The translations under genes were made by a program, and so were the position numbers. 64,000 bases of DNA, from NCBI RefSeq assembly GCF_006345805.1, contig NW_021832123.1, positions 182,140-246,139 of the forward strand, read 5' to 3'. Positions 5,528 through 64,000 of the stretch are shown here, one piece after another; the first letter of the stretch is position 1, and each line of letters begins with the position of its first letter. Source of the stretch: Octopus sinensis (Eukaryota). A model generated the notes under the pieces. It searched no databases. It saw nothing but the letters and a program-made list of their open reading frames with translations, and had not been told where the DNA came from.

Positions 5528-5544
5528 AATATTAATTACAATAT

Positions 5545-5615
5545 CGTGAGGCCTTTAACTAACTTAGCTATCTGTAATTTTTGTCTTGTTTTATTTCCAA
5601 AAAAAAAAAAAAAAA
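5545..5615 (+). mobile_element. ~70-bp 3' end of a related CRE subfamily with poly(A) tail
   Basis: cgtgaggcctttaactaacttagctatct matches the 3' end of the neighbouring CRE but has a different distal UTR; ~A19 tail; TSD aattacaatat (5534-5544, 5616-5626). Absent from copy B. Confidence 0.72.
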
Positions 5616-5958
5616 AATTACAATATTGACATTAAGTTAAGCTTCAAGGTCACGTCAGGTATCACGCGGCCCATAGGTGTAACGCAAACCATGTCACATA
5701 TTATACTAATCTTCTTAGAACATCCAAATATAAAAAAAACACAATTCCTATTCGTTTCCCGTAAATCCACTGCTCTAAATGTGCTAAATAAAAAATGGTT
5801 GTTCACTGAAGAATACGCCTGAAAAGCAATACTCCTAACTCAAAATTAATGGCCGAACCAATTTCACATCCAATTAAAAGAATTCACGATTTTATTTAAA
5901 CGTCGACAATTCTAAGGTTGACACCTAACTCCATTCTCAATAAATTTCCACCGGATAT

Positions 5959-8016
5959 TCATCCCCTTAAATACTTGTTAACCGTTCGCTTCAGATTAAT
6001 CTTTCCTATTTCCGCTCTCGCAATTATCATTCACTACACTCACAAATCGAACAACTCGATCTCTCCTTTTTCAACCTTTGTCGTGTTGATGACCATTCGA
6101 CTGAGCACCTCAACCGGTGTCCCGGTTCACTTCCCTATAAAGTCCATTAGACGCAGTCGTTAGAGAGGATCTCATATCTTGATGTGTTATGCAACAACAA
6201 CATTAATCAATTGACTGTTACCAATTAAACAGACCACGCAATATTCCTTCCTTTCTTGGTCTAAACTCACACGGGTATTCCAGTCGTTGGAAAGCAATGT
6301 CAAAATACATTGGTTTCAGAGACATGTGCGTAGATTCTGAATATCCCAACAACACATTACTCACGGCCTGAGATTAGAACCCACAAATACCCGAATTTGT
6401 TCACTCATCGACACATCCCCCAACATACCACACATGACTTCCCTACTCCACTCCCGAACTTGAGAAAGGGACGATTCCAAGCACGTAATCCAAAAGTCCC
6501 AGTCACCTCCGTCATTCCTCAGCACTTGAATCACTCTCTCAATGCCACTGTCACGACAGTAATTCACTACTTGTCCATACTTCTTCTTCTGCATGAGACT
6601 CCTCACTTTGTTAAATGCCCTGTGGATGAGACATGGAGAAATCACCCGAGAGCACAGCAAATGGTCTGTTCGTGCTTCATCCTCTCAAAAAGACAGACAT
6701 CCTCCCTCAAAGACAACATCCTCATCAGTTTATCAATCCTCTACAATACTAGACCAGCCAGTACAGCTGAAACACGACTGTAGAGGCAATAAAGACGTTC
6801 ACTTATGGTTTTATTCGGCCTATACTTCCCTCTCCTGTATTCGTGGGTAGTCCCCTTCCCCTCCATTGAGCCGATTATCAGCCAATCTCGTTTATTCGAG
6901 TATATAAGCGTCCAATAATATACAAACACACACACTGCGTCACGTGGACTCACATCCCCCACAGACATGTCCAACAATTCCTCCATTTTCTACAAAAATC
7001 GACTCATTTTCAATTTACTGATATTTTTAGCCTCGGTCTCATTTTATCCAAAAATTTCCCCCCATTTATAACTAATTGCTGGTAGTTTGAAAATGTCTCC
7101 TCGTTTTTTTCCATCAAAATGAAATAACTCTCCAAAAACGCACGAAAATGCTCATTTTTGTTTATCTGAGAATCAATTTCGACTGGTCGACCAAACACAA
7201 ACACTTCTCTAACATGACCCTTACCCACATTTGCATCCTTCACTAAATTAGCACATGTACCAATTGGTCAATCCCCGACTCCTCCATTTGGACAGCCAAT
7301 TCTGCCTCAGCTGAATCCCTCTGACTGTAATGACAGATTTCCAGCTGATTATTAATCTCCTCCACCATCTGGGAATACTCCTCCCTGTGGGACGAATACC
7401 CTTACTACCCAACAGGCCATAAATCCGCCTAAATTACTAATAGTGCGGCTTAACTTTGATCTGTTGAATAAAATGGCAGCAGAAATCCACTCTTCGTTGT
7501 GAAATGAACAGGTTGCCTTCACCCACGTTCAATAGGCCTCAATTTCGTGGTTGGTTAAGGACTCGATGACCTCAATTCTCTCCTTTCGTACATTATTGAG
7601 AATATTGGCCAGAATAGAGGCTTTCCTGAGTCTTCTTTTGACGCGAAATCGACTTCTTGTATTTCCAGATGTTCGGAGGAGGGATAATGCCTGGGTTAGA
7701 CACCGTTCCACTAAAAAGACACACATTTCGAGATATCTAGTCCTCACCCTAATACGATTACCTCGAGTTGGTGAGATATTCAGCAGTGATTGGCCTTGGA
7801 ATAAAATTGTTTTTTGTCTTGCATTTTAAATTGAGTGATTTTCTGGCACGTTGAATGACACGTGTGCAGTGTGAACTATAACTTGAGTAGTCGCTGTACT
7901 GTAGTCCATATGTGTTCTGAGACCTTCTTACACTGTGGAGAACTATATATATTAAATAATCAAATACTTGGAAAGCAAACCAATTCGAACGAACTTTGAT
8001 CACCACCAGACTCCAT
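5959..8016 (-). pseudogene. SRP68: Signal recognition particle subunit SRP68, copy A; premature TGA at 7529-7531 and 1-bp deletion near 7395
   Basis: SQNTYGLQYSDYSSYSSHC, RYLEMCVFLVERCLTQA and RFRVKRRLRKA match the SRP68 N-terminus (QQQHGLRHGDFQRYRGYC, RYLLLVLMDAERAW, RFHLLSRLRKA). TAT TGA here vs TAT TGC in copy B. Confidence 0.85.
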
Positions 8017-8098
8017 ACACTCAAATATTTTATTTTTTATTCCATAACTAAACTATAAATAATAAAAAAATAATCAGGGAGTCTACTCCCAAAAAACA

Positions 8099-11000
8099 TT
8101 AAGAAAAAGGTAAATTATATTTAGCAGCACTACTCAATGGATACTGGTCTCTCTTGAGAACATGTAAAATATCCTTCAAAGTGATCCTCTTCGACCTCTA
8201 AAAATAAAATGGGAGACACACCATTTGATAGGAAGAGGCCTCCCCACCTCTGCTAGAAATCTCCCTTCTCCTCTGACCAAGAGCAGCCAAAGCCGTCTCA
8301 TTCGACTCCTTATTTCTGACCTGATCCTCATTCTCCTGTCTCCACTTTTTCACTTTTTTCTTCATCTCCAAATACTCCGGCTGAGAAAAACGTGCCTTGC
8401 ATTTGGATGCCTTGTTGAGACTCTCCATGGTGGACTCCTCCCTTCTCCGACTCTCCAACTCATTGTAGTCCTCAATATACCGCAACTGTGCCTTCACATC
8501 ATCCACCATCTCATATCGGGGGTCGTTCTACTCACTCAGTCCTCCCACCCAACCATATATTTCTCCGACCTATGTTCAGACACAGTGATGGCCTTCTCCA
8601 CCAACTGCCTCATAAAGCACTCCGTAGCCCTGCAAATCAACATGAGTGTCTCCATCGGTATTTCCTGAATGTTGTACTCCCCGGCTACACTCACTCACCC
8701 AACTAACCAATTGCTGTGAATCGTAGACAGAGGGCGTCCATCACTACTAGTAAGTCGTCCTTGTAGTGACTTAGGTGAGTGTCCTCACTCATTTCCACCA
8801 CTTCCTCAGTCGGGACCTCCCTCCTATCCTCATATCGACTCATAGGGGGTGTCTGCTTGACCAGGACGGGCACTTGTGGGGACATCATTCTCACAGGCAG
8901 TGGCTGATGTCTATATATATGTGGAGGAATAGGAATAGGAATAGGAAGTTTTATTGGAAACAGAGAAGGGTTAAAGGTTAGGGGGGAGTTTGTATAATGA
9001 AACAATAGGACTACCCTATCGACTTCTTCCCAGAAAAAAAAGAGACCCCCTCAAGTAAATTTTTTTTTTTTTTTTTTTTTTTTTTTCTTTTCTACCTCTG
9101 CAGGTACGTCCCAGTGACAATTGAGTTGGATTTATAACCACTTATAGCTTTTTCGACAGTTTCACCGACCATGGAGGATTTACTTTCAAGCCACAGGGGG
9201 ATTGGATCTTCAACTTTTTGGTGGTAAGCAAGCTTCAAAGCGAGCCTGCGAGACTTTTCAAATTTAGTTAAGATGGTGTCCTTCTTTTTAGAGAAGTACC
9301 ATCCCTCTTTTCCGTATAGTAGTCCCGGTAGGATCACCGTATTGAAAACGTAGAGGAAAGTATCAGGCTCCAAATTTAACTTCCTCAGGCAGAACAGAGC
9401 ATTAGTTGCTTTCCTTTTACTTAATTTTGCGTTTTCGAGATAGTTTCCCTTTTCATCGATGAACAAGCCAAGATATTTAATTGAGTTTTGTCGAGGTATG
9501 TTCTTGATCAGGCACGGTAAATTTATTAAATTTCTGCTTTCTGTGATTCTCAGTAATGCGGACTTCTCACGCGCAATAATGAACATATTTTCATCGCACC
9601 ATTGCTCCACTGTATTCATATATGATATAATCCTTTGTTCGGATAAGGCAGGTTTCGATGAAATGTCAAGGATTACAACATCATCGGCGTATATCAAAAT
9701 TTCCGTCCATGTGTTGACAGGAGACGGCAGATTGCTCATCACAATGTTGAATAATAGAGGACTGAGGACTGATCCTTGAGGGACGCCTCTTTAAGTTTCA
9801 GTTCATCCGAGTCATAGTTCAGAAAGCTTATCACAGAGCGCCTGTCGCGGAGGAAGTCTTTTAGCCATAGGAATAGTCCTTTGTCTATGTGACACTTCGC
9901 CAGATGTCTAAGGAGACCGAGGTGCCAACCATATCAAAGGCTTTTGAGATGTCTAGAGAACACAATTGTCAGACACTCTTTGAAATCCAGAGCCTTTACA
10001 ATCGACGAATGAGTGTATAAAGACAGTCAGCACAGGAACGACCCCTCCGAAAGCCCCACTGCACGTCTTTGAGATAACCATTTCTCTCGACGTGTTCAGA
10101 GAGTCGTTCAAACATTACCCTTTCCATTATTCGACTGATGGTAGGAATTAGGCTTATAGGCCTATAACTTGTCGCCAAGTAACCAGGTTTTCCAGGCTTC
10201 CGTATCATCCTTACCTCCGTCAGTTTCCATGAAGAAGGGACGTATCCCAAGCTCACACTGCGGGAGAAGAGACATCCCAAATATTCGTAAAGTTGCTTGG
10301 GAGCTTCTTTGAACATGCGCATGGTTATCTTGTCCTTTCCCGGAGCGTTATTTTGGAGTATCTAACTGCATTTTCCACGTCTTTGCACGTTATAGATTCC
10401 GAGCACATTGGTAATGAGCTAAGATTGTCTTCCAACTCTTTTTCCATATCAAACAAAGCTGAATCAGATAGATTTGTATCCGGATTGACTTCTTGTATTC
10501 TTTTGAGACTATCAGCAAATATGTTCGGGATTTCTTCATGAGATGCAGGGGATCCATCTTGTTTTAGCAGTTTAGGTATAGTTTTCTCAGACGTCGAGGT
10601 TAATTTCGAGTAGACCTTCCAAAAATTTGGACTTCCTTTATGTAGCTTTTTGCACTCAGTATTCCATTTTTTATCCTTCGCCACCTTCGCCGATTTCTTA
10701 TTTCTTCCGTAATGGTGAAGATTTCACTTTCCAAAACGGACCGGTCACGAAAATCTGCGCAGCGCCGGAGTTTGTTCCTTAGACATTGTTTTTTCCTTAG
10801 TAGGATTTCAACATTCATGTTTGGCATGTGAGTTTTCCTATTGTTTGAGACGATTTTTGTAGAATATGTTTCCAGATAAGACTTTATGTATCCAATAAGG
10901 GAATTGCTAGACTTCTCGAGGTCCTCAGATGAAGAATTTTCGTCAAGTTTAGGAGCGAAATTGCTCAGATAAAGTGTAAAACATTTTCGGTAGTGTTCCC

Positions 11001-13387
11001 AGTTTATAGTCGAGAGGTTATATCGTATAAAAGTTGGTTTACCCTTTAAAGGTCCAAGGTTGAGTTTGTATAAAATTGGTAGATGGTCACTTCCAATATC
11101 ATTTAAGGTGTACGGTTGTTCCATAAATTGAAGAGTAGACATAGAGACCAATGCTACGCCCAAATAGTCCCACCCTCCTGGTGAGTAATGATTTGGGGTT
11201 TTTGATGTGATGACCGAGAAACTGAGAGATTCTGAAAGCTTCTTAAGAATGATGCCATCCCTGTGGTTCTCAGACAGCCAAAAGATGTGCATTTGGCATT
11301 TAGATCCCCGAGGAGTATTGACAAATGATTGTGTTTATCGGCAAAAAAAGTCCTTGATAAGCGATGAATAATTGGAAAGGGATTTTGAGTACATCCCTCC
11401 GATTGTTACCACCCTTTTTCCAGAAGGACGTCGATTGTGAGGAATTCACACAATTCCTCGGACACAATTTTAGATTTTTCACCCTTAGAGTTGATTTGTA
11501 GTAGATAGAAGTGCCTGTTCCAGCGATCGAGCCCGGCTTCCACTTAATATCAAGGGAACGATAGCCATCCAAGTAGTAATCATCATGTTTTTTGATTTTG
11601 TTTCGTTTACGATCAAAAGGTCCACGGGGTTATGGGATAACATATCCTCAATCTCTGAACGCCTTCTCTTTAGAGAACGTGCGTTCACAGCGATAATAGA
11701 CAGAAAGGGGCTCACGCCTGATCAATCCTTTCCCTTCCAAGAGAAAGGGACAACAGATTGTTGATATCGAGGCCTTTTTCATCGCATATAGCGATTATTT
11801 TGCGAATCATAGAGGTAAGCTCAACGTCGATAGTTGGTGCTTTCCTCTTAAAGCGGGTTGGAGGCTCTGTGTTGTGTATTGGGAGGCAAAGTTGCGTCTT
11901 CACTAACATCTGTTTGCGTTGAGGAGTCAAAACAGCGGGAAATTGTGGGTTTTCGCCATACAGATTCAACGGCCTCCGCTTTTGACCATACAGTTTTTGA
12001 GTGTTCTGCTTTGGCCAGTCTGTCCCTGGCACTGAGCTGCTTTTTTAGTTGTTCAGTGGCTGCCTTAGCTGAAGAGCAGCCACCGTAGCAAGCCAAATGC
12101 CCACTCAGACCGCAGTTTATACATTTTTTCTCAGTTTTTCCTTTAATCGGGCACATTTTCATATTATGATCACCACCACAGAAAAGACATCTTTCCACTT
12201 CTTTGCAGAAGTTAGCAATGTGACCAAATTGTTGGCAGCGAAAGCATCTTGTTGCTGGGTTTTTAAACCATTCGCATCGTATTTTTTGAAATCCCACTTC
12301 GATTCCCATCCTTACAAGCGAAGTGGCTTCTGCCCTCGAATTCAGACTCAACTTTCCAACAGGTATACTCCGTCCATTTTTGTAGAACCGTTGGAAAGTA
12401 AAACCGGGGTTGAGAATTTCTTTGAGGTAAAGATCCAGGTCTTCCTCGGAGACCCAAGATGGTATTCCCTTCAAGACTACGGTCGATGGTTGCAGACTGC
12501 ACGCAGAAATATAATGGCCGTCCTGGCCAATGGTTTGTTATACTCGAAGTCATTCACAAACGAGTCCCTATCACTAGAATTTGAGAATTCGAGGGTAAAG
12601 TCCCCAGACTTCCTGGCAGTAATTCGGGCCTTCTGTGCAGTCTCGGATTTGGTTAGAATATTAAAGGACTTTATTCGTCCAATCGCATAATTTTTTATCT
12701 GCAGCGAGAGGACAAGAGACTCAGTACAGTTTGGATTGTTCAAAGAGACTTGAGAGGAGTGTGACCCCTCCTCATCTTTGATACGGATTTCATCTTTGCG
12801 TTCAAGCTCTTGAGACACAGAAGATTTTGAGTTTTTGATAGTTTTATTTTTTGCACCACGAGAAACGAAACGTGTCATGCCGTCAATTCAACCTATATCA
12901 AATCAACCTATATGTGGAGGTGGCCGAATCCCGTTTATCTCAATAGTCCCCGAAAGAAGACATTTCCTCAGAGAATTGAGCGTTTCCAGAAATAAAACAA
13001 ACAAATACTTTCACGAGCACTTCTATTTCGTGGAAAGGGGTATCCGCCTTGAAATGTGACTTTATCACGTTCATGAAGGTGGGGAGGTCGTTTTCGTCGT
13101 TCTGCACGTGACTTGGGGGTGTACTATTAGTCGTTGGATTTGGTCGAGGATCATTGATAGCTTGTCCTGGTAAGGTCCGGTGCTGCAGAGGGAGATTATG
13201 TTGAGGAAGAATCCTCGACATCTTAGGATTTCTGGGGGTAATTGGAGGGAATACTTTGGAAGTGTGGGTCTGGTTCGGTAGGATGTTTGGGGTATTCTGG
13301 ACGAGATATTAGTCGTACTCCTTGAGAGGTGTAATTAGTGGGCTGGACTTCGTAAGGATCGTTTGGGGGCTTATTATGATGAGACAT
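8099..13387 (-). pseudogene. TAF4: TFIID subunit TAF4, copy A; coding exon interrupted by a 4-kb LINE
   Basis: Histone fold LICRATECFMRQLVEK, DVKAQLRYIE...NETALAALGQRR and C-terminal KRITLKDILHVL match TAF4. The uninterrupted equivalent is at 48496-49779. Confidence 0.85.
8928..12908 (-). mobile_element. Near full-length two-ORF APE-type LINE (Jockey/I/R1-like group)
   Basis: 12-bp TSD tatatgtggagg (8916-8927, 12909-12920). ORF1 12878-11712 with three CCHC knuckles. ORF2 ~11715-9092 with APE (AVNARSL, LIVNETK, GSDHLPI) and RT (KAFDMV, GVPQGSVLSP, YADD). AATAAA and a (CCTATT)3 3' tail. Several frameshifts. Absent from copy B. Confidence 0.95.
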
Positions 13388-13589
13388 TTGTGGTTACTAT
13401 TTATTAAAACAAACAATGACACATTAAGTGCAATAATAATGCTCACAAGAACGATTTGAATATTTATTTTATTATACATTTAATTTTAATTAATATATTA
13501 ATTTAAAAAATCATGAATTTATTAACATATTAAATAGATAAACCGTGCAAAAAATTAATGAATCCTTATCAAGATTATGCTTTCTTTCG

Positions 13590-14870
13590 ATCCTCATATA
13601 GTCTTCTTTTAGGCACTTTAGTAATGTGAGTCCAGGTCTCCCACGGAATTGATGTATGTCTCTCAATTTACCTTCAAGTCATTTCCAAATAGTGCACTTG
13701 AACAGAATAGTCCAATATGTTGACAGTTGTTCGTTTTGTTACGAAAGCTTCATTTTCTATTGAATATTGCGTATAGTTTGGTCCAATTTCTTATGGAATG
13801 AATATAGTCTTTTCAGTTCTTTTTTTCTAAGTGAAATTATTACATTGAAAGATAATAAATTAGCAGATTCTTTTCGGATACAAAATCTACACCATTTTCA
13901 TATATGAATTCTGTAATTTTGAGACATTTAGGCCTATCTTTATTTTTAGATCTCCCAACCCAGCTTCCAAATAGACAACAAATAGAACGGGAGACAAAGA
14001 ATTTCTTCGTGGAGTCCGATTGACAGAAACTTTTCAGAGTGTTTAGTTCCAATTTCGACAGCTAGCTTTGTTTCATTGAGAAGGAAGCACCATTTAATGG
14101 CCTATTTAATGAATTCATTAGCTGTTTTCTGTTGATGCAATCAATAGCATTGCTGAAATCAATTCCAAGGAGGTAGATGATATTCGTGTATTTTTGGCAC
14201 CCAGTTAAAACATCGAAAATCATTATCCGAAGCCACTTTGACTATTCAGGGGAATTCCCTACTTTTACATGATTTAAAACGATAATTGAGGGGCTGTTAA
14301 TAGGACTAAGGTTTCTAATAATCCTTTTTTTCAGATTTATTCATCGTTAATACAACATCATGTCAGATAATGTTCCAAAGTATTCCGATAATTTGTTGAA
14401 ATGATTTCTTGAAGTGCCAAACAATGCACTTCGTTTTTTCAAACCTGTTTCAACTACGATATCCGGGTTTTGGATAATATAACTTTAGATAAGCGTTTCG
14501 CCACTATGTCATGTTACAACTTTTCAGTAATAATCTTTTTTAAATGGAGTCAATCTTGTTGAATATAAACTTGTAATAGTTTCCATTTCGACAGCCTAAC
14601 CACTTCGTCCTGTGTTTTGCAGGGTGTTCAAAAGTAATTCACAGATATAGACACATTGTACTAAAAAAGCTGACAAGAAAGTCTTTAAAATGATTTCTGA
14701 ACCTTTTCCCCAAAAAATCCCACATAATCGTCATCTTTCCTTTGTAACTTGACCTTCTACTCACCATAAATGAATGTTAGAGTAGATTTGGGGAATCTAT
14801 ATAGACAATAGATAGGTTCATGCAATTTTTTGTAGTTCCATTGTATTTCCAGTGATTTTGATCTTATGCC
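13590..14870 (-). mobile_element. Old, degraded non-LTR retrotransposon RT remnant (RTE/CR1-like); present in both copies (B ~49990-51170)
   Basis: Degenerate RT motifs GIDFSNAIDCINR, SLSPVLFVVYLE and YENGVD, with many stops. Confidence 0.55.
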
Positions 14871-15510
14871 TGTGTCGACCATAATAATATAAATATTTGT
14901 AAAAAATCACAAAAACAGACAATTAATGACGAAACTATCCTATTTTTAGACACGAATAATACAGAAAATGTCAATATTGACGCAAAAAAATATGCAAATT
15001 ATTAACTAGTACATTTTTTCTTCAGCTAATGAACTCGACAGTCTTTTTATCAGAGCATTTCTTCTACCTTTGTCCTGTTCATCAAAATTGGTATGAACGA
15101 TTCCCGACTGTTAAGCCCGTATTTTTACTATTGACTTATCGTTCGCATGGAGATAAGCAAAAATTGTCAAATCAGCGATATCATGTAATGATCTTTCAAT
15201 TATGTTAAATGACTTCAAAAACTTCAAAGTCATTAGTCGTTTGAATATAATCTGGATTTTCTCTTTTTCATGACATTAACTTAAACAAATCTGTTTCGTC
15301 ATCCTCCGCAATAATTCTTTTTGATAAATGTATAAAATCCTATTTGGATTGTATTTACCAAATAAGACAACATAATTTTTCAAATCTTAAAAATTGTTTT
15401 CTCTGATTAAAATTTTATTCTTATTGTAATGCTAATTATTGATCGTTCTTATTCTATTGGGTTAGCTATTTAAATAAAATTTAGCGACTTTTTCAGTTTT
15501 CGATTAACAA

Positions 15511-17449
15511 ATGGAACACACGTTAATCACGGATGATTACGAACTTTATAAAAATGAAATTAAAAGTGCCATTCAAATGGACAGTCATTTCAAGGAAAAC
15601 GAAGTCTCATTTCTAAACGGCCTGATCAAAGATTTGCCATTAACAACAATAAATCAAAAAATATGTCTCCGGTTGGTGGTTGAATTCATCTTAGAGATGA
15701 GCTGTACAATTCTTCTTTGAATCACTTTTTATCTCAAAAAAGAGAAGCAATTCCAAACAAACGTCGAAATATAGAAAATATATCAAAAATTAACGGAAAC
15801 TTGAGCAAGTTCTTTCAATTTATTTACAGGTGTTTTAAAGTTGCTCATTGAAGGGACTTTTGGTTATGGAACGATGATTTACTTTCACTTCTTGTGGATG
15901 ACCTTTGTTCTCAATTTCATTCAATTAATTTTTTTATGTGTCTTTTTTTCATACCACTCATAATTTTTAAAGTTCCGCTCTTTTTAGCGTCTTTTACATT
16001 TTTTGACGTGTTGACGGCAAACGTAGATTTGATTTACTATTTAAGGGTTTTATTGAAAATTCGTTTCTTTTCTACGGAAACTATGACAAATTTACGTGGA
16101 AATTTAATTTTTCTATTTTGTACTATCCAATTATATTCTCAAGTTTTATTCTGCAACTGGTCTATCTTTTTTACATGTATTACTACTATTATTAGCCATA
16201 GAGTCAACGAGAGCTATAAAGCAAAGGCTTCAGTGAAAATTACATGACTTTGAACGTCCACTTCATCAAAACTCTTTTCGCACACCGAAGCATATTCAGC
16301 TTAGAGTTCAAGAATAAACAAAAAGCAATTTTCTTTAGTTTAATAGTAATTTCCAAGTCAAAACATTCAGAAAAAATTGATCGACAACAAGGAGAGAGAA
16401 AAGTGTTTGAAAACACCTGATAAACAAATTTATTACACGTTTATAAGAACTCTAACGGGATTTGTTTTGGTAGTCCTGTTTGTTGTACATGTGATCGCTC
16501 TTTACTACGCCAATAAAGTCACGATCGACAATCCTGTAACTTTGTATGTCAAGATGAAAGGACAATCTTTGGTTGGAGTTTCTGACCTCGTTTGTGTATT
16601 TTATCGACGGATTATTATTGTCGTTGATTGCTAATTTTTTTGAAAAAGTTGAACTTTACTCCCCCGAAACAAAACTAAAAATTAAACTTGCCAGGTTTGT
16701 GTTTTTAATATTTTGATTAGTTTCGATCAACATTTTTTCGGTTTACTTTTATTTCTACATTCTGGTCAGTTCTGTGACTCAAAATATAGTTCCTGGGATC
16801 CATGTTAGTCTTTCTAATTTACGTGGCGAGTGACAACATTGTTCAGCTCATTCGGTTTTACTCAATTGCCTCGTTTGTCTATCAAATATTTATTTAAGTT
16901 TGACTGTGATTTTTGTGCCTTTGATCAGCATTACAATACTTTTTTATTTATTTGGGATCTTTTCATTAAAATTTGTTTGTCTGATTTTTCTAAAAATTTA
17001 GATTCATATCAGTTGCTATAATATTTCGTCGGGCAAACTTAACAAATACACTCAGTCTAACTTATTTGGAATTGTGTCCCTCATCATTATACTTGGACTA
17101 CACACTATTCCAAACTTTTTTGTTTATTTCAAGTAATAATTGATAAAACTGAATTCAGTCTAAGACCATCAGAGTCGTGTGGCCCATATCGCAACACGAC
17201 ATTCATGTACGCATCTATGGTACACATGATTGAAGTTGACGCGACGAGCAATAAAGCTATTTTAAGTTACAAGCATATTGTGCCTTCGTTTGCTATTTTA
17301 AATTTGTAACAATTATATAGTATTGTAGATTAACGTGCATTTTTCTGATTATAAGGATGAAAAATATCGCAGTATCTTACAAAAACTTTAGGAAAAATAT
17401 TAAAAAGGTACACCAAATTTTGTATTTATTAAAAGAGGATAATTCTTAA
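15511..17449 (+). pseudogene. Transmembrane channel-like (TMC family) gene, copy A; 162-bp segment with the start of the TMC domain replaced by 3 nt at ~16826
   Basis: IEGTFGYGTMIYFHFLWMTFVLN (TMC TM1 region), RPSESCGPYRN (TMC PSxxCGPF motif), last TM plus basic tail. The CWE...MYRL...KEFNV block is present only in copy B. Start and upstream exons are uncertain. Confidence 0.75.
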
Positions 17450-17726
17450 ATTAAAAGTATACAGTACATGACCTGACAAAAAAAACATTAGACCACAAAT
17501 AACTAGTTTTAGAGCACAAAATAAGAAAATCTGACCCATCTAATAATCTTTGTGGTCTCAAAATAAAAAATGATCTCAGCGTGCAAAAACGTGTAAGAGA
17601 ACTGTTCCCCACAAGAACGAAACGAAAATAAAGACATTTTATTTATTAAAAAATTAATAATAAAAATATCTAATTCTTATTTTTCGAACGAGATTTTTCT
17701 TTTTTACAGATTCTAAAAATAATCGA

Positions 17727-18103
17727 CTAGCAATAACTCGATAAATATTTAGCGATCTCTCTATCAATTTTTTCATTACTTTCTGCAACCAATATCCCGA
17801 CAATAGAGTCAATCTCCTCAGTTATGTGGTCGGCCCTACGTTGACATGAATTAGTACTTTAGTAATTGGTCGGAAATGACATCAATAAGCCTAGATCTTG
17901 ATATTTTTGAAGTAATATCGATAGATTTGAGGTAGTCGCCTACAATTTCGTGGATTTGTTGTTTTAGAGCTTTGTATGTCTAAATATGGTAAATATTAGT
18001 CTACTGTTAGTTCTAGAGATTTTAGACAGGTGCTTCTTAATTTGTCTAGCATTCCATTAGATTTTATGTCTGAAATAATCGCTTTCGTTTCTTCCGCATG
18101 CAT
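17727..18103 (-). CDS. BOD1: BOD1-like (COMPASS Shg1-domain) protein, 3 exons
   Basis: Spliced product AIISDIKSNGMLDKLRSTCLKSLELTTYKALKQQIHEIVGDYL...ADHITEEIDSIV resembles BOD1 [20 protein letters not shown]...YQNLRQKVDNFV; 25- and 22-nt GT-AG introns. Confidence 0.72.
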
Positions 18104-19173: not shown

Positions 19174-21640
19174 ATGATTTGGTTAATATTATTCGTCACT
19201 AAAGCACTAAACCTAACTGGTATCTCGAATTTGTACTACTAACATAGTCGATGGTCAATTTACAATACGTACCACGAACATGTCTGGAGATGATTTTCCT
19301 GCCACCCTGGAATGCCCTCCTGGGACAATTATATCCTCTTGTTCATATCTCGGATCTGCTGATGGGTCATATGTGGATGAAAATATATGCACAGCACGAG
19401 GTTCTTCAAACACATCATCCTTCCAAGTAACTGAGGACAATTCGACTTGATAGACAATCGTCGTATGCATCCCGATGGACAAATACCGAATAATTTCAAT
19501 CAACTATTTTGTCCAAGAAACTATCCACGTTGATTGCCCTGCAAATACTCAACTGACTGACTGCCGATTCTACAGCAGGCAAATATATTTCCTTAAAATA
19601 ACCAGCAAGGGCGCTGAGAATTTTTATAGAAAAAGTACAAGTGGAAATACATGTTATATTATTGTGTTGGATACATTCTTCCATTACAAATGGGTTGGGG
19701 TATTAGTTCAGGTCTCCTGTCTTGGTATCCGACGACAGTTTCATTTGTTTAGAACGAATTGATCAGACTGTAACTGGGCATTGGAATGTTGACAAGAGTG
19801 GCAAGTTTACTTCGATCGGAGCCTGTCCTCGTGGATATACAATAAAATCATGTCAATGCTCCTCTCCGTCGGACTGTGCTTCGACAGACGTCCAAAACGG
19901 AATCTGCACAGTGTCATATCACAATAACAACAGGAACGCCCAAGTACGTAATTTTCTCCACACATAGGCGTCAATTGGTTGCGTACAATCCGACAATGTT
20001 AAAACAGTTGTTGGACCTCTAGACGGTGCATCCGACGGAAGGATCTCTGATTGTTTAATAAGTCCAGGGTAACTCCACCTCAATAAAAAACAGACCAAAT
20101 TCGAAGGAATCGTTTAATGAAATAAAGGGACTACTTAGGAGTGATTGTCATTTTTTATCACCCTGTTCTGACTGCCAAGTAAAGCCTATCACTATTGGTG
20201 GTAATTTTACGTTTATGGAATAGTTCCATTAAAACGACAAGCTTACAACGGTTACAAGTTAGTCGCCAAATGTCCCTGCAATGAATCGTTGATTGGTTGC
20301 TATGCAAAGGACTCGTCTGCGTTTTTGGATAAAGCGGGCTGTCAGGCATATGATTCGTCAAAACACGTAAAAGACCAGGCTTTTGCGGTGTGCAAAAGCT
20401 TTCCTCACTCGAAAATTATATACCGCAAAATAAAATTCGACTATTTGGCTAACTTCACTATCGGGTGTGGAAAGGACGAAACTATTCTTAGTTGTGTATT
20501 GGAAAATAAGTGAAAAATAATTGTAAAATCACCAATTTAGAAAAGAAATTATCAATTTTGTCTATCAGAACAACACTTGCATTATATACATGGACTCCCC
20601 GTCTATCATTGCTATTTGCAAATGTTTTATTTGTAAATCCTTCATTAAATAGATGACTATGAAACAGAAGTGACCAGTGACGTCATTTTCAGTCCTACTC
20701 GCGCTTTGTCAGAAAAAACAAAAGTTCAATGTCCTTCCCAACATCATCTGAATCGATGCTACTCAAAATATTCGGGCCGTTCCTACATTCGTGGCAACGA
20801 ATGTTCAGTCTATACTACAGAAAATAGAAGTTTCATCCAAGTTTAGACGAATGTATAATTCCTAGGCTCAAGCCGTGTGCACCAAAGATTCTTATGAACC
20901 CCAAGCAACGCGAATTCCGGACGTAAAAAGAGCCAGAGAACTTTCAAAGTATTTTAAAAACATTCAATGGATGTCTGGTCCCTCTGGAAGATATTCAGAA
21001 ATCGAATGTCCCGTCGGACATGACATTATTGGCTGCGAATGTTCGACTACCTCGAACTGCTATGGAAATATTATTTCCAAAAATAATGCAGGACGTTCTC
21101 CACAAATGCAAATTCTCATGTTCTGTCCATTTTTGTATTGTAGGCAATACTTATATGTGGAATGTTGCTTAACCAGTCTCATGTTGTGGAAATTGTGAAA
21201 AATGAGTTTCCGATTCCTCATAACACAATACCTAATCCTCGGAAAAATTATATATTGTTAAGCTGCTCATTATTCTCTTGGTGTAATTCCAAAATGCTGT
21301 GGAATTCTGCTGTGATGGAGGGGGATAAGTGCCAATTTATGAGAGAGCCTTTGGTTAAAGGACAACTCGAACAGGTGTACCTCCGAACTAATTAAATTAT
21401 CTTTACTAATTTAAAATATTTAACTTGACTAACAAATTTGTATTTATTTTATGTTCAAACTACATAGTTAGAGAAATTAATTTGACTTATTCGATTAAAT
21501 ATAGCCCAGACTGTTTGAAAGTCATTTTATGTATTTGTGACTTAGAAAGCGCAAGACCTCCCTGATTGGAAAAGTGATACTCCTCAGGACGCGGTGTTCG
21601 AGAGTAAAGATGAAACTTACAATTACTTGGATACTGCCTA
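19174..21640 (+). CDS. Secreted Cys-rich protein with ~8-9 tandem PCSK9 C-terminal/resistin-like modules, no protease domain seen
   Basis: Signal peptide MIWLILFVTKALNLTVDG, then modules CPPGTIISSC, CPANTQLTDC, CPRGYTIKSC, CPCNESLIGC, CGKDETILSC, CPSQHHLNRC and CPVGHDIIGC, each followed by a further C and usually a terminal A/I-x-C. Many 23-29 nt introns. The 3' end is approximate. Confidence 0.68.
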
Positions 21641-22178
21641 GAACAGGATTTGTTGAGCAAACGATCCATTTTATTTACTTTTATTATCATGGACAGTCTA
21701 GGTTGAGTCTAAAATCTGTCACATAGTCACTTGGCCACCAATTCTGACAAAGATCTCGTCATGTGTTTGGCACAAGTAAAGGGATTGGGCTGGAATATGC
21801 AAAACTACTTCTGTTGTACATTCTGACCGCCTGTGATTGGCTAAAGCCCAACCTTTTGTTGCAAGAAAAGTCCTAAAGAACTTGATTTCTAAAATAATGT
21901 TGAATCAGAAAAATTTTGTATGACCATTTAGAGAAACTAATGCAATTTCCACAGGTTATATTTCTCCTCTGTCACTCCGGAAATACTGCCTTTATTGTGA
22001 CCTGTTTAATGCCGCCTGCAATTCTCTTGGACTGTAATCAAATAAGACTTGTCCGTTCTGATCTTGCTCATTTTCATTTTAGTCAATCAGTGACTTTGGT
22101 TGCCTGAAAACAGTGGAAAGTACTAATAAATTATGTCAATTGCTTATCAAGAATGTTTAATAAGAAAATCATAATTAG

Positions 22179-30191: not shown

Positions 30192-30662
30192 TTAACAAAG
30201 TCTATAAATTAAATGAACCCCTGAGTCTGTAAATACAGGCTGACTTAACTCCAAAGGGTTCAGACCGAATGCCACGTCCTCGAAAGGCTTTTGCATTTGA
30301 CCACGTTTAAAAAACCCCAAATCTCCCCCCTTCTTAGAGGAAGAACAGTCACTTTGTTCAAATGCAAAATTTTCAAATGTTCCAAGTTGATCACAAATCA
30401 TTTTCCTAATCTCAATAATTTTTTGGTGGGCTTCGTTTTTGGTGATCGAGACCGGACCTGTTCTCCACGAGTGAGGGTTTCGTGACATGTTGTGTTTAAT
30501 GAGGATGTGAGAACAGCGTACACACTCCGGATTAGTCGAAGGTGGGTCCCATTGGCTCTGATTAGTTTTGTGATTAAAATAGTAGTCTTTACCTGACGAA
30601 TTAGTTATTCTATTACCTGTGGACTGACTTTTGCGTTTACTCCAACCAGGAGGCAAATCCAT
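30192..30662 (-). CDS. PIN1: Peptidyl-prolyl isomerase Pin1 (WW + parvulin), with one 24-nt in-frame intron
   Basis: [21 protein letters not shown]...[46 protein letters not shown]. Confidence 0.96.
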
Positions 30663-30729: not shown

Positions 30730-33580
30730 AATCCCCTTCTTTCGATGAGTTTGTTACACTTGTAACAATGTGGTTGGATGTTTTAGTATGATAAAAATGT
30801 TTTCTTTTGGAACCAGTTGAACATACTATTGTGAGCTCGGTGCAATGAAAACAATCAATTACTGAAATTTAATCGTTCGGGTCATCAAACCATACAAAGA
30901 TCACTTTCTAAAAAATCTTCTGGGATTCTAAAATGATTCAAATAGGTAAAGATGTACATGTCAAACATTAAATTACCAAAAATACAAAAAACTTTGAGAA
31001 TTACTCTACGAGGGTGATTACATGATTAACCTAATTCATGCAAACTTGCATGTCTCATAATACAGCAAGAATGGCGTTGTTGGAAATTCGATTATTTTAA
31101 ATGAACTGTCAGACTAAATTAACTAAATAATTATGATACATATAGTTCAAGTGCCATATATTGCAGATCATTTCTTGCGTAGTATTTCTTGCAGAAAAAG
31201 AGATTTTTGTGGTTCTAGCTGTTTATACATGAAATAAGTCCAATGATTGTTCGAAAAAAGGTTTAGTAAATTAATGAAATTTGTTAAATATTTTTTTTGC
31301 AATTAAAAGCACCCCGATAACAGCTCCAGCAACTGAAACTGGAATAATGACGTTTCTTTTAACTTTTTGACTTTTCGACAAAATAATATTAAATTTGTAA
31401 CGTATATTTCCAAACTCACGTGATGCTCCCTGAATTGTCAAATTGAATTTCTTTTCTGAATTCCACGGTATTTGGTTTTTCGAGAGCGACACATTTCCTG
31501 ATTGGTGGTCAATGGAGAAATATTGAGAATTATTCGAAGAAATGTTGAACACAAAATCATTTATTAAAAAACTTGAAATATTCGCTGAATTTTCCAAAAA
31601 CATTTCTCCGGGTTGTATTTGTTCCAAATAAATATTTTGGTGGCTGCCAACAAGTTCCCCGTTGGAAACCGGTAAGAAAATTGTCGATGTGTCTAAAACG
31701 TGGAGACTGCACTGCATAATGTCGAATAACCATGGTTGGCCCTGATTCATTGCTTTTACTTTTAGAATATAAAACCCTTCATTTTCTAATTCCTCGTTAT
31801 TGAAGATTTCCCCTGACAACTTATCAATTTTGAACATGTTTTTGAGATTATTAGAAATGTTTAAATCTCGTTGCAGTTCGTAAACAGTAAGAATACTGAA
31901 ATGATTAACATTCATTGGTCCTGATTCAACATCAAATGCGGTGACTGTAATCAACTTTGTTTGAGAAGGTGTATTTCTGACTGTGGCAACTGCACATCCT
32001 TGATTCGTAAATTCTGATGGATTGTCATTTAGGTCCGTAACTGTGATTTCATCAACAAACCATTTCTGATCGTATTTTCCCCGGTGGTAAACTGACTTTA
32101 TATAAATTTTTTTGTTTTTCATAGTCGATAACCACTTTGGAGTACAAGCCTTCGATTTTATCTAGACGAATATAGTCGTTTTCATATAGATAACAATTTT
32201 CAGGTTTAAATGTAAATAGCTCCAAGTAAATACATACGAATCAACTGGCATATTTTCATAAACGCCGTCGGGCAGCATTATAGAAAGGGAACTTTCGTCC
32301 ACAATCTAATGAATAAGTAATAAGTTAAAATATTAAATAAAAGCAACTAACTTTGACTTTATCGATGTATAACTTTCTTTTGGGTCCCACATTCCGAAAC
32401 GCTCATCAAAACAAATAACTTCAATGGTAACAGTTGGGGAAATAGCGGAATAATCAACTAAATTCATATCATAAAAGTTTTTGTTGACATTGACCAGCTT
32501 TACAACATCCGTATTGGCTTCACAATGAACTTGAACATCCTGGTCAATACAATTGACATATAAATTGTCAATTAGCTCATCCTGCTTATTCACAATGTAG
32601 TATTCGAATGGAAGGGTCCAATTGAAGATGAGTTTGCATGGATGGACTAGTTCTACTTTGACGGTATAAACCTCGTTTTTTGAATATCTTGAATAAACAT
32701 TAAACGTGGATTGACTAAATGGGCTAGTCAGGATAATGTTATTATATGAATCAATCGAATATCCCATGTCTGTGTTTTCCAAAAAATAGTCGTGTTTTGG
32801 GATGATTTGAAAGTTGTTCGCAGTGTTGTTATAATATCGTTAATCATAGGGAACGAGTTCAGAACGACGTCATAAAATTGAGTACACTCTGATCCAATAT
32901 TGGATGTAAAAAAGAGTTCAATGTCCATCCACGACCAATATTCTTTTCTTTGATTATCATAGGCAAAGACCCTCAATTTTACTGAATTTGTAAGATTTTC
33001 AACATGATTTTTATAAATCATCATTGCATCGGATTTATTTGGCCCCAATTCAAACATTTGGTGGCCAAACAATTCGTAATTGACAACTGCGTTTTCCGAA
33101 CAGTCCAAATCAACTGCCGCGGGGAAATGGAGGATAAAACCAACTGAAATAATCGGCAATTTCAGACTCCGACGAGAAACAGGGAAAACGGGGGCATTAT
33201 CATTAATGTCAATAATCTCAGATTTATAGAAGAAAATACATTTATGTTAACATACATGTCGAAAGCATTAAGATGCAATGTTGTGTGTCCAGTTGTTGAC
33301 TTTGGAGACAGGTTCTCATAGTCAACACGACTTTTAATCTAATTGATGAAAATGCTCACATTTGACTGACTTTGATTGTTCCTTCTAAATCTATGGATAA
33401 ATAGTAAGGCAAAATTCTCATCAGTTCGGAAGAATATTTTTCGCAACTGTAACGACTAAGACGATTGTCGATGCAGACGTTGCCGACAGTTAAGAAAATT
33501 GGAGATTCTTCATAAATGCTAAATTCCAGATTTATCAGCGATATTTTCGTTATTAACTCAAAAAGAATTGCAATGTGCAT
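30730..33580 (-). CDS. Cadherin-superfamily (protocadherin-like) type I membrane protein, ~5-6 EC repeats; 3' end approximate
   Basis: N-terminal hydrophobic signal, DYEN, DINDNAPVF, AVDLD, DLNDNPSEF, TM VIIPVSVAGAVIGVLLIA followed by KK. Confidence 0.85.
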
Positions 33581-33990: not shown

Positions 33991-35214
33991 ATGTCGCAAG
34001 ATAAATTATCGAAGCATAATCTTCAAGCTATATTTTGCAAAGAATGCAGGAAATTTTATGCCAATCCGGAATGGAACAGTATGTGCTGGCAGTGTTATAA
34101 AAATCGTTCTAATCAAGAAGCCCTGGCGTAAATATCCCCAAAATTAAGTTATTAGTCAACCCAAAAAGTGGTTTCGCTGGTTTAATAAAGCAAATGACGA
34201 AACAATTACCAAAAATCACTTTCGGGAACTGATCCAACAAAGTAATCTCAGTTTCATGACATCCCGTCTGTCCAATGATCTTTCCACCACTTTTTATAAC
34301 TTTATAAAATGTGCCAATTCCCAGTCTGATGTGCGACGAATGAGCAGTCTGTTCTGCCGTCTCTACAAGATTGTTTGTGACTTGTACTATGAGCGCATAA
34401 AGACACCAAGTTTACCTATTAATGGCCCGTCATATCAGCATAGATACTGACGAGTGCCGAATGCTGACTGAGTGGGTAGAAGGGACTTTAGTGGATATGC
34501 TATATCCCAATATTTTTGGCACTACAGAAGACGAACAACTGGATTTTGAATTACAGCATAAAATATCTCGACTGCGGTGGCTGCAAACCCGGCACGTGGG
34601 CTGCCGTTTGGATATTGAGGATGAGAATGTCGGCAAATTTATTCAAATGGCTACTGACAGTAAATGTGCTGGTCATTTGTTTAGTCCTGATCGGTCTTAG
34701 TCTTCAAAAAACCACAATTGACAAACTCAAGGCAATAACTGAGTGCTGCACTCACATTTTGGATGCCCTCATATACCAAGTAACCTTCCATCAATATTTG
34801 AAGGGAACTGATCAGTCTATCAACGCGGACGATTTCCTGCCGGCCCTGATTTATGTGGTTGTCCATTCGAATGCTCCTCAATTAATATCCAACACAAGGT
34901 TTATAAGTAGGTTTTCTGCACCCCATCGGTTACAGACAGGAAAGATGGCATATTACTTTACGAATATGGTTTGGAGGTGTCTATAAGGCTTGTAGTGTTC
35001 TGTTATTCACTTTATATCTAATATATCACAGTCCTCCCTTGTGGTATCCGCGGAGGAATATGAACACTACATGAATCCTTCTAAGGACACGGTCGGGCAT
35101 ATTATTCAGTCTCTCAAAAAAAGAGTTCAGGTTCTTACTGTCCAGGGGGACAAGCTTTATTCTGATGTTGACAATCTTTGTTCTTCTTATTCTGATTTTC
35201 TCAATAAAGTGTAG
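33991..35214 (+). CDS. RABGEF1: Rab5 GDP/GTP exchange factor Rabex-5 (A20 zinc finger + VPS9)
   Basis: CKECRKFYANPEWNSMCWQC, LQHKISRLRW, DKLKAITECC, NADDFLPALIYVV, ISRF...GKMAYYFTN. Confidence 0.9.
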
Positions 35215-40691: not shown

Positions 40692-41009
40692 TTAATTAAT
40701 TAATGCTGTTGACAAAAAAATTACAATTTTAAATAAACATTCCCAACTTCATTCTCAAAAAAAATTGAACAAGTCAACAAACAATATATTCTCTCTGTAC
40801 TAAATTACGCAAGTTTAAAGTGGGTTTTCTGTCTATCTACATGTTCCACTATAATACTTTGATCAGTATAAAACAAGGCTATGAGCCTGAAATGAACACT
40901 CATCGACCATCTGGACTATTATGTGACATGGGCTGCGCGATACCTATGGGCCGCGTGATACCTGACGTGACCTTGAAATGTGCAATTATGACATTGATGG
41001 GATTAAATT

Positions 41010-48413: not shown

Positions 48414-48495
48414 ACACTCAAATATTTTATTTTTTATTCCATAACTAAACTATAAATAATAAAAAAATAATCAGGGAGTCTACTCCCAAAAAACA

Positions 48496-63850: not shown

Positions 63851-64000
63851 CTAGCAATAACTCGATAAATATTTAGCGATCTCTCTATCAATTTTTTCAT
63901 TACTTTCTGCAACCAATATCCCGACAATAGAGTCAATCTCCTCAGTTATGTGGTCAGCCCTACGTTGGCATGAATTAGTACTTTAGTAATTGGTCGGGGA
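63851..64000 (-). CDS. BOD1: BOD1-like, copy B, last exon (partial at the window edge)
   Basis: Matches 17727-17876. Confidence 0.7.

What the first reader, a model, noticed from the sequence alone, without database searches (positions are those of the whole stretch)
19174..21640. Secreted protein built only of ~8-9 PCSK9-CTD/resistin-like modules
The repeating pattern C-P-x-G/N-x-x-I/L-x-x-C ... C ... A/I-x-C matches the module that occurs three times in the PCSK9 C-terminal domain and once in resistin. Here it is amplified behind a signal peptide, with no subtilisin domain and no obvious TM helix. I do not recognise this architecture from any named family. In a parasite it is a candidate host-interacting or surface protein, possibly stacked trimeric beta-barrels. 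The fold assignment rests on Cys spacing only.
Basis: partly seen in the sequence, partly recalled or inferred. Interest (0 to 1): 0.72.

Follow-up and report, generated by a model that had tools for sequence, protein, structure and literature searches.

The report
Secreted protein of PCSK9-CTD/resistin-like modules
A ten-exon gene with tiny introns encodes a probably secreted protein of about 593 residues, made almost entirely of seven or eight copies of the disulfide-rich module found three times in the PCSK9 C-terminal domain and once in resistin; this gives an orphan gene of a probable animal parasite a sound domain assignment, but the domain itself is already known.

Summary
A + strand gene (19174-21198, 10 exons, nine GT-AG introns of 24-31 nt) encodes about 593 aa: a short hydrophobic N-terminus, then six well-supported Cys modules and one weak one, plus a degenerate Cys-rich spacer.

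Direct Pfam matches are sub-threshold (Resistin E 0.0019 for module 3; PCSK9_C3 E 0.098 for module 2). A profile built only from the window's modules finds 38 proteins among 1.84 billion (best E 2.6e-17). Where I checked, their matched regions are Pfam PCSK9_C1/C3 domains.

An HMM built only from those relatives scores the spliced protein at 119 bits. Shuffles that keep every Cys in place reach at most 14.5 bits, so the likeness is more than Cys spacing.

A three-module relative folds at pLDDT 95.7 onto the PCSK9 C-terminal domain (Foldseek E 1e-11, TM 0.82). The window's module 5 folds as a small beta domain whose best TM-score (0.61) is to PCSK9, but that match is not significant.

Most relatives carry exactly three modules, and none found has more than seven. 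No close orthologue was found.

Verdict: a new, lineage-specific member of a known domain family. It is probably an extracellular binding protein built of stacked three-module units.

The parts
19174..21198 (+). Gene, preferred model: 10 exons (19174-19219, 19248-19426, 19454-19724, 19753-19943, 19968-20068, 20094-20197, 20224-20509, 20541-20623, 20653-20840, 20866-21198), 593 codons plus TGA
   Evidence: Hand-built and checked by translation. All junctions are GT..AG and the frame stays open. In-frame TGA directly before the ATG.
19174..19218 (+). Candidate signal peptide MIWLILFVTKALNLT (short h-region IWLILFV)
   Evidence: Read from the sequence. Second most hydrophobic stretch of the protein. 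Not tested with a signal-peptide predictor. Relatives P0013, P0016, P0026 and P0007 have clear N-terminal signal-like sequences.
19280..19468 (+). Module M1 (aa 27-80; Cys 38, 47, 63, 80), interrupted by intron 19427-19453
   Evidence: 33.8 bits against the HMM of foreign modules.
19502..19720 (+). Module M2 (aa 92-164; Cys 103, 112, 142, 164), with two long loop insertions
   Evidence: 14.0 bits. Pfam PCSK9_C3 E 0.098.
19791..19982 (+). Module M3 (aa 179-234; all six family Cys: 190, 199, 201, 207, 217, 234), interrupted by intron 19944-19967
   Evidence: 30.3 bits. Pfam Resistin E 0.0019, 19.2 bits.
19983..20196 (+). Degenerate Cys-rich spacer ('M4', aa 235-297; Cys 258, 281, 287, 290), two small exons; the least certain part of the gene model
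   Evidence: Scores below 0 bits with every module HMM. No hit in the six-frame scan.
20238..20393 (+). Module M5 (aa 303-354; core Cys 314, 323, 337, 354, plus an extra Cys 316), uninterrupted
   Evidence: 14.4 bits. AF2 model pLDDT 76.8 with five strands. Best TM 0.61 to PCSK9.
20433..20622 (+). Module M6 (aa 368-420; Cys 379, 388, 406, 419), interrupted by the 31-nt intron 20510-20540; weak
   Evidence: Correct Cys frame after the intron was corrected. Only 2-8 bits.
20697..20883 (+). Module M7 (aa 436-489; Cys 447, 456, 471, 488), interrupted by intron 20841-20865
   Evidence: 22.1 bits.
20974..21129 (+). Module M8 (aa 520-571; Cys 531, 540, 542, 548, 570; the fifth family Cys is missing)
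   Evidence: 23.3 bits. Shares the C-x-C-x5-C pattern with M3.
21130..21198 (+). Hydrophobic, Cys-rich C-terminal tail FLYCRQYLYVECCLTSLMLWKL and the TGA stop
   Evidence: Translation. Function unknown. Too short and too polar for a TM helix.
21157..21395 (+). Optional 3' extension: a 20-nt GT-AG intron (21157-21176), then the ORF to TAA 21393-21395, holding a possible degenerate ninth module (YILLSCSLFSWCNS...GDKCQF)
   Evidence: Only 5.4 bits, E 3.5. The intron is shorter than any other in the gene. ATTAAA overlaps the TAA (read).
21546..21641 (+).
   Evidence: Needs a 171-nt intron (21375-21545) in a gene whose nine other introns are 24-31 nt. No homology support.

Best explanation
This is one protein-coding gene of an animal with ultra-short introns, probably a myxobolid myxozoan or a dicyemid. 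It encodes an extracellular, N-glycosylatable protein of about 593 aa with many disulfides.

The chain after a short signal-like N-terminus is a tandem array of homologues of the PCSK9 C-terminal-domain/resistin module. Each module is a small beta-sandwich. By homology to PCSK9 it is pinned by a first-to-last Cys bond and a second-to-third core Cys bond. Only M3 has the extra C-x-C...C pair found in its relatives in full.

By analogy with PCSK9 and with nearly all relatives found, the modules most likely pack three at a time into pseudo-threefold units. Linker lengths suggest M1-M2-M3, then an 80-residue Cys-rich spacer, then M5-M6-M7, then a 43-residue linker, then M8 with or without a degenerate M9.

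The protein has no catalytic domain. It most likely acts as a multivalent binding or adhesion protein on or around the parasite.

Shown: the gene structure by sequence logic, the repeats, and the homology to the PCSK9_C/resistin family. Inferred: secretion, disulfide pairing, packing in threes, and the binding function.
For: Gene model: nine GT-AG introns of 24-31 nt restore one open frame of 593 codons.

Homology:
- The window-only profile A2 finds 38 proteins at E<=1e-3 and 9 at E<=1e-10 among 1.84 billion.
- Of ten hits scanned, nine are Pfam PCSK9_C3, most also PCSK9_C1, with E down to 7e-34. Seven score above the curated cut-off.
- The foreign-module HMM scores the protein at 119.3 bits in 7 domains. 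Cys-fixed shuffles reach at most 14.5 bits.
- hhalign gives 97.6% probability, E 3e-12.
- Direct Pfam: Resistin E 0.0019 for M3.

Fold:
- M5 model: pLDDT 76.8, all-beta, best TM 0.61 to PCSK9 chain 7kfa_B.
- Relative P0001 (three modules): pLDDT 95.7. It superposes on the complete PCSK9 C-terminal domain 7anq_A at TM 0.82/0.77, E 1e-10.

Packing in threes: 25 of the 42 hit and cluster-member sequences carry exactly 3 modules and three carry 6 (two of those are near-identical cluster mates). Within the window protein, last-Cys to next-first-Cys distances are 23, 26 | 80 | 25, 28 | 43.

Extracellular setting: 39 Cys, 7 N-x-S/T sequons, no TM segment. Relatives combine the modules with WSC, PAN, PA14, LamG, C-type lectin and reprolysin domains and have signal peptides.

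Tandem duplication: three introns sit at the same module position, in phase 0, after a Gln, five residues before the last Cys of M1, M3 and M7.
Against: - No direct Pfam match reaches the curated cut-off: best 19.2 bits against 25.
- The window-only profile hits PDB PCSK9 only at E 1.7.
- Foldseek for the window's own module has no match at E<=1e-3. PCSK9 is at E 4.2, probability 0.30.
- The relatives used for the reverse HMM were chosen by the window profile, so that test is partly circular. Their Pfam and structure assignments are independent of the window.
- No transcript evidence exists for any intron. The spacer exons and the 3' end are uncertain.
- The signal peptide is short and was not tested.
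- M8 lacks one core Cys and the total number of Cys is odd (39).
- HMMs specific to module positions 1, 2 and 3 show no 1-2-3 periodicity in the window protein, so the three-module register rests on linker lengths only.
- Function is inferred only from domain context.
Confidence: 0.75

Rival explanations
1. The protein is a generic Cys-rich repeat protein. Its likeness to PCSK9-CTD/resistin is convergent Cys spacing, not homology.
For: Direct Pfam hits are below threshold. PDB sequence search gives E 1.7. Foldseek for M5 is not significant. Two of the 38 profile hits (P0002, P0008) look like false positives, where many weak repeat matches add up.
Against: With every Cys fixed and all other residues shuffled, the score falls from 119.3 to at most 14.5 bits. 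Non-Cys positions are shared with the family: P after the first Cys, G at +3, L/I three residues before the second Cys, D-G/N-x-C, A-x-C, and the S-G-x-D-D lead-in of M1. hhalign gives 97.6%.
Confidence: 0.04
2. The locus is a decaying pseudogene, or an artefact that joins two genes (M1-M3 and M5-M8) through a non-coding spacer.
For: The spacer exons (19968-20197) have no homology support. M6 is weak. M8 has lost a core Cys, and the Cys count is odd. The gene sits beside a recent segmental duplication, transposons and a satellite. Exact look-ups of three candidate models found nothing in the 15-billion-protein collection.
Against: One frame stays open across 593 codons and nine canonical, uniformly sized introns. 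There is no ATG or signal-like start upstream of M5 in frame (read). Six modules keep the framework residues. The Pin1 ORF of the same window is also absent from the collection, so this genome's proteins are probably not in it at all.
Confidence: 0.12
3. The protein is not released but held on the parasite surface, by a GPI anchor signalled by the hydrophobic C-terminal tail, or by an unrecognised downstream exon.
For: The tail ...VECCLTSLMLWKL is hydrophobic. The six-module relative P0007 ends in a TM helix and a short tail.
Against: The tail is only about 22 residues and contains R, Q, E and K. No 19-residue window exceeds 1.38 on the Kyte-Doolittle scale. Alternative 3' exons encode polar sequence.
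Confidence: 0.2
4. The modules mimic host resistin/RELM cytokines. This would be molecular mimicry, possibly by gene transfer from a vertebrate host.
For: Module 3 matches the Pfam Resistin model best (E 0.0019). The organism is probably an obligate parasite (PMC13644364).
Against: The strongest relatives are unnamed proteins from environmental assemblies, one of them also in a marine eukaryote transcriptome set (MMETSP). They match at E 1e-17, far better than vertebrate resistin or PCSK9. The resistin coiled-coil stalk is absent. The gene has the host genome's own ultra-short introns, three of them at homologous module positions.
Confidence: 0.03

Closest known systems
C-terminal Cys/His-rich domain of PCSK9 (Pfam PF18459/PF18464/PF18463; PDB 2qtw, 2p4e, 7anq)
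   Same: Same module frame: C-x8-C, about 15-25 residues, C, about 11-23 residues, (A/I)-x-C. Hydrophobic residue three positions before the second Cys. All-beta module. Tandem modules in one chain. The window's relatives superpose on the whole three-module domain (TM 0.82).
   Different: No prodomain or subtilisin domain. Seven or eight modules instead of three. The PCSK9-specific third disulfide (N-terminal Cys to the second Cys of the terminal C-C pair) is absent. Not His-rich. Direct profile score is below the Pfam cut-off.
Resistin / RELM hormone heads (Pfam PF06954; PDB 1rfx, 1rgx, 1rh7)
   Same: Module 3 carries the C-P-R-G-(F/Y)-x-(V/I)-x-x-C-x-C...C signature of the resistin head as I recall it. 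Its Pfam Resistin match is E 0.0019. Resistin and RELM-beta appear among the fold matches of module 5, at TM 0.39-0.44.
   Different: Resistin has one head per chain and trimerises through an N-terminal coiled coil. Here there is no coiled coil, and several heads lie in one chain. Most window modules keep 4 of the Cys, not 10.
Unnamed eukaryotic proteins with PCSK9_C-type modules from environmental assemblies and marine transcriptomes (P0001, P0003, P0005, P0007, P0016 and others)
   Same: These are the closest relatives by sequence (E 2.6e-17 to 1e-4). They share the six-Cys consensus seen in M3. Some have a signal peptide and nothing but modules: P0003 and P0007 have 6 modules, P0005 has 7, and P0016 and P0028 have 3.
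   Different: Identity to the window's modules is only 12-28%. Most have exactly three modules, or modules joined to WSC, PAN, PA14, C-type lectin or reprolysin domains. None of the relatives found has eight. The window's modules have mostly lost the inner C-x-C...C pair.

Membership tests
PCSK9_C / resistin-like module superfamily (Pfam PF18459, PF18463, PF18464, PF06954) | Direct profile match at or above Pfam's curated cut-off | tested here: not met
   Whole protein: Resistin 10.8 bits (cut-off 25) and PCSK9_C3 8.4 bits (cut-off 26.7). Single modules: Resistin 19.2 bits for M3 and PCSK9_C3 13.3 bits for M2.
PCSK9_C / resistin-like module superfamily | Significant profile-level homology to bona fide members, in both directions | tested here: met
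   The window-only profile reaches P0001 at E 2.6e-17 among 1.84 billion proteins. P0001 matches PF18463 at E 1.3e-17 and PF18459 at E 2e-16, above the cut-offs. The foreign-module HMM scores the window protein at 119.3 bits; Cys-fixed shuffles reach at most 14.5. hhalign gives 97.6%.
PCSK9_C / resistin-like module superfamily | Conserved Cys framework (first Cys, C-x8-C, a central Cys, and a last Cys after A/I-x) | tested here: met
   The four-Cys core is present in M1, M2, M3, M5, M6 and M7. All six family Cys are present in M3. M8 lacks one. The actual disulfide pairing could not be tested.
PCSK9_C / resistin-like module superfamily | Small beta-sandwich fold of the module | tested here: inconclusive
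   AF2 of M5: pLDDT 76.8, five strands. The highest TM-score, 0.61, is to PCSK9, but Foldseek gives E 4.2 and no match at E<=1e-3.
PCSK9_C / resistin-like module superfamily | Three modules (or three heads) packed around a pseudo-threefold axis | not testable with these tools
   The tools refuse spliced sequences, so no multi-module piece of the window protein could be folded. The relative P0001 does pack this way (TM 0.82 to 7anq_A). Linker lengths in the window protein fit 3+3+(1-2), but position-specific HMMs give no register.
PCSK9 orthologue (proprotein convertase) | Inhibitor I9 prodomain and peptidase S8 (subtilisin) domain upstream of the modules | tested here: not met
   No such Pfam hit in the 579-aa draft model even at E<=10. 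The protein starts with a signal-like peptide 26 residues before module 1.
Resistin/RELM hormone | Single head of about 55 residues with 10 Cys behind an N-terminal trimerising coiled coil; total length about 90-110 aa | tested here: not met
   593 aa, 7-8 modules, and no helical segment predicted in the module that was folded. Not a resistin orthologue.

The most novel reading that the evidence does not exclude
The protein is a parasite-lineage invention: the longest tandem array yet seen of PCSK9-CTD/resistin-type modules. Two complete three-module pseudo-trimers and a third, decaying one would stack into a rod that the parasite secretes or displays to bind host or tissue ligands. If so, the three-module PCSK9-CTD unit would be an ancient eukaryotic extracellular building block, found in protists, invertebrates and vertebrates, that can be concatenated, rather than a vertebrate speciality.
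Probability: 0.3. Interest if true: 0.6.

Novelty: new member of a known kind. Interest (0 to 1): 0.4.

Why it matters
It gives an otherwise unannotatable, fast-evolving gene of a probable obligate animal parasite a defensible domain assignment and a concrete structural hypothesis, so it can be listed as a candidate secreted or surface binding protein.

It also shows that the module known from PCSK9 and resistin has many unnamed relatives outside vertebrates, usually in sets of three. That is useful background for thinking about what the poorly understood PCSK9 C-terminal domain does.

It does not reveal a new kind of domain or mechanism.

Tried and rejected
- Word-indexed homology search with the 579-aa draft spliced model: no hit at E<=0.01 among 5.8 billion proteins. 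The same tool with relative P0005 found only itself and P0004, so it is too insensitive for this family.
- Sequence search of the PDB with the full protein and with the module profile: nothing significant, PCSK9 at E 1.7.
- My first model removed a 73-nt intron (20496-20568), which deleted a loop of M6. I replaced it with a 31-nt intron (20510-20540) that restores the module frame.
- Alternative splicing of the 'M4' region through a 70-nt intron: worked through by reading the sequence. It gave no better module and was dropped.
- Search for a second copy or paralogue in the window: none. The gene lies just outside the 98-99% segmental duplication, so a copy beyond the right-hand end of the window is possible.
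- Position-specific HMMs for module positions 1, 2 and 3, meant to find a three-module register: no discrimination.
- Rfam scan of the window: nothing.
- Exact look-ups of three candidate protein models and of the neighbouring Pin1 ORF: none in the collection. I therefore cannot say whether the gene is annotated anywhere.
- Literature searches for the Pfam names and for resistin in myxozoans or dicyemids: nothing relevant.
I therefore used only exact exon translations there.
Full report
**What is at the locus**

The window is AT-rich eukaryotic DNA, about 35% G+C. Bacterial-style ORFs break the region into short pieces. Three-frame translation shows coding segments on the + strand that jump frame every 50-290 bases across tiny GT...AG gaps.

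Removing nine such introns gives one open frame. The introns are 28, 27, 28, 24, 25, 26, 31, 29 and 25 nt long, median 27. The frame runs from the ATG at 19174, which directly follows an in-frame TGA, to the TGA at 21196-21198. That is 10 exons and 593 codons.

A 31-nt intron (20510-20540) is the right solution, because it restores the missing loop of that module.

**The repeat is real**

The protein has 39 Cys. C-x8-C occurs seven times, six times as C-P-x-x-x-x-(I/L)-x-x-C. Each time except in M8 a third Cys follows, then a last Cys preceded by (A/I/V)-x. tblastn of the protein against the window also shows cross-matches between modules, for example M3 with M8 at E 0.002.

**What the modules are**

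Direct searches are weak but point one way.
- Pfam on the whole (579-aa draft) protein reports only two families, Resistin (E 0.76) and PCSK9_C3 (E 3.2).
- On single modules, M3 gives Resistin at E 0.0019 (19.2 bits, cut-off 25) and M2 gives PCSK9_C3 at E 0.098.
- A profile of the modules hits the PCSK9 C-terminal domain in the PDB only at E 1.7.

The decisive result came from scoring a profile against 1.84 billion representative proteins. The profile was built solely from exact exon translations of the window (alignment A2). It found 38 proteins at E<=1e-3 and 9 at E<=1e-10, the best at 2.6e-17. Most hits matched in three stretches.

Two hits (P0002, P0008) are repeat proteins that I regard as false positives. 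I scanned ten of the others against Pfam. In nine, the matched regions are PCSK9_C3, and in most also PCSK9_C1, with E down to 7e-34. Seven of the nine score above the curated cut-off and two (P0006, P0010) just below it. Resistin appears as a weaker overlapping match in some. The tenth, P0012, shows only PAN and EGF.

**Reverse test and controls**

I cut 84 modules out of those relatives, with no window sequence among them, and built an HMM.
- It scores the spliced window protein at 119.3 bits in seven domains: M1 33.8, M3 30.3, M8 23.3, M7 22.1, M5 14.4, M2 14.0 and M6 2.0.
- Five hundred full shuffles of the protein reach at most 9.4 bits.
- Five hundred shuffles that keep every Cys in place reach at most 14.5 bits.

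hhalign of the window-only alignment against the foreign modules gives 97.6% probability, E 3e-12.

In a six-frame scan of the whole window, the six best pieces all lie at 19217-21195 on the + strand, and nothing else is significant. The reverse test is partly circular, because the relatives were chosen by the window profile. Their Pfam and structure assignments do not depend on the window.

**Structure**

- M5 (63 aa, alignment A3 of 57 module sequences) gives pLDDT 76.8, pTM 0.58 and five beta strands.
- Foldseek against the PDB finds nothing at E<=1e-3. The highest query-normalised TM-score by a wide margin is PCSK9 (7kfa_B, 0.61, probability 0.30). Resistin (1rgx, 1rfx, 0.39-0.43) and RELM-beta (1rh7, 0.44) are also listed. 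This is consistent but not significant.
- The best relative, P0001 (209 aa, exactly three modules), folds at pLDDT 95.7, pTM 0.91. It superposes on the PCSK9 C-terminal domain at E 1e-11 to 1e-10 and TM 0.80-0.82. Against 7anq_A, the complete domain, TM is 0.82/0.77 over 218 columns.

The family that the window's modules belong to therefore has the three-module PCSK9-CTD architecture.

**Architecture**

The relatives show a strong preference for three modules. Of the 42 hit and cluster-member sequences listed, 25 have exactly three contiguous modules. Three have six (two of them near-identical cluster mates), one has seven, one has five and two have four. Most of the rest are fragments with one or two modules; P0020 has only five very weak matches (6-7 bits each).

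In the window protein, distances from the last Cys of one module to the first Cys of the next are 23 and 26 (M1-M2-M3). Then come 80 residues holding a degenerate four-Cys spacer that scores below zero with every module HMM. Then 25 and 28 (M5-M6-M7), then 43 before M8. This fits two complete trios and an incomplete third.

It is an inference, though. HMMs specific to module positions 1, 2 and 3 of the relatives do not discriminate among the window's modules, and I could not fold a multi-module piece.

A possible ninth module lies in the ORF 21177-21395. It is reachable only through a 20-nt intron and scores 5.4 bits (E 3.5). I regard 21198 as the most likely end, 21395 as possible and 21641 as unlikely.

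Three introns interrupt M1, M3 and M7 at the same place. Each is in phase 0, after a Gln, five residues before the last Cys. This fits tandem duplication of an intron-bearing module.

**Likely function**

The protein has a short hydrophobic N-terminus (MIWLILFV...), seven N-x-S/T sequons and no transmembrane segment; the maximum 19-residue hydropathy is 1.38. With 39 Cys, an extracellular location is the sensible reading.

It has no catalytic domain. Relatives combine the same modules with WSC, PAN/Apple, PA14, LamG, C-type lectin and reprolysin domains, and often have signal peptides. That is an extracellular recognition and adhesion context.

I therefore propose a secreted, or possibly surface-held, multivalent binding protein made of stacked pseudo-trimeric units. 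This function is inferred, not shown.

**Organism and novelty**

The window encodes a cadherin domain, a Pin1-type WW-rotamase, a VPS9 domain, a Tc1-type transposase, a reverse transcriptase and a PIF1-type helicase fragment. It is therefore from an animal.

According to PMC13644364, among sequenced animals introns under 30 bp are known only from myxobolid myxozoans and Dicyema japonicum. The medians for myxobolids are 22-27 bp. Both groups are obligate parasites, and in both the 5' splice signal is reduced to GTa. The introns here fit that description. I cannot tell which lineage it is.

No close orthologue was found. The collection also seems not to hold this genome's proteins, because the intronless Pin1 ORF is absent too. 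The closest relatives are unnamed, or labelled only 'hypothetical protein'. They come from environmental assemblies, and one is also in a marine eukaryote transcriptome set. Proteins made only of 6-7 such modules exist (P0003, P0005, P0007).

The domain is known and the modules-only architecture has precedents. This gene is a divergent, lineage-specific member, and its array is longer than any in the relatives found here.

Noticed in passing
window 376-17873 versus 38149-53847 and 63450-63997: A recent segmental duplication, 98-99% identical. The two copies differ by insertions: non-LTR retrotransposon sequence at about 8.9-12.9 kb in copy 1, and a Tc1-like element at about 42.1-43.7 kb in copy 2. 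The gene studied starts 1.3 kb beyond the end of copy 1. Copy 2 resumes at 63450 and runs off the window, so a paralogue just beyond 64000 is possible.
   Followed up: partly
window 55493-63215: A satellite array of about 81 copies of a 95-bp unit, with a 191-bp higher-order period. It is inserted in copy 2 of the duplication and has a strong positive GC skew. The ORF at 62055-62411 is only the repeat read through.
   Followed up: partly
window 1597-2511 (-) and 39358-40272 (-): Two copies of a 304-codon ORF. It matches only the C-terminal two thirds of the class I Tyr/Trp tRNA synthetase core (Pfam tRNA-synt_1b positions 100-291). It is either one large exon of a TyrRS gene or a truncated copy, and it has been duplicated with the segment.
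   Followed up: partly
window 30195-30662 (-): An intronless 156-codon Pin1-type gene (WW domain plus PPIC rotamase). This exact protein is not in the 15-billion-protein collection.
   Followed up: partly
window 31271-33159 (-): A cadherin-domain gene with a C-terminal TM-like stretch (AGAVIGVLLIA). The neighbouring ORFs at 32333-33159 probably belong to the same gene. This marks the genome as metazoan.
   Followed up: partly
window 34516-34986 (+), 42841-43395 (+), 9092-12474 (-), 54249-54683 (-): A VPS9-domain exon, a Tc1/mariner DDE_3 transposase remnant, a non-LTR retrotransposon (RT, and a zinc-knuckle ORF) and a PIF1-like (Helitron-type) helicase fragment.
   Followed up: partly
window 19427-19453, 19944-19967, 20841-20865: Three of the nine introns lie at the homologous position of modules M1, M3 and M7: phase 0, after Gln, five residues before the last Cys. 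M2, M5 and M8 lack this intron. This suggests module duplication after the intron was gained, followed by intron loss.
   Followed up: partly
window 41055-41432: A 192-bp unit repeated twice (97% identical), overlapping an ORF on the - strand. Unexplained.
   Followed up: no
P0002 and P0008 (hits): A 1997-aa bacterial-type protein with 21 copies of a D-C-P-G-N-Y-T-I-N-R-T-W...D-A-C-G-N-T repeat, and a low-complexity 802-aa repeat protein. Both reach E 1e-16 and 4e-11 with the module profile by adding up many weak matches. They are likely false positives and a warning for this kind of repeat profile.
   Followed up: partly
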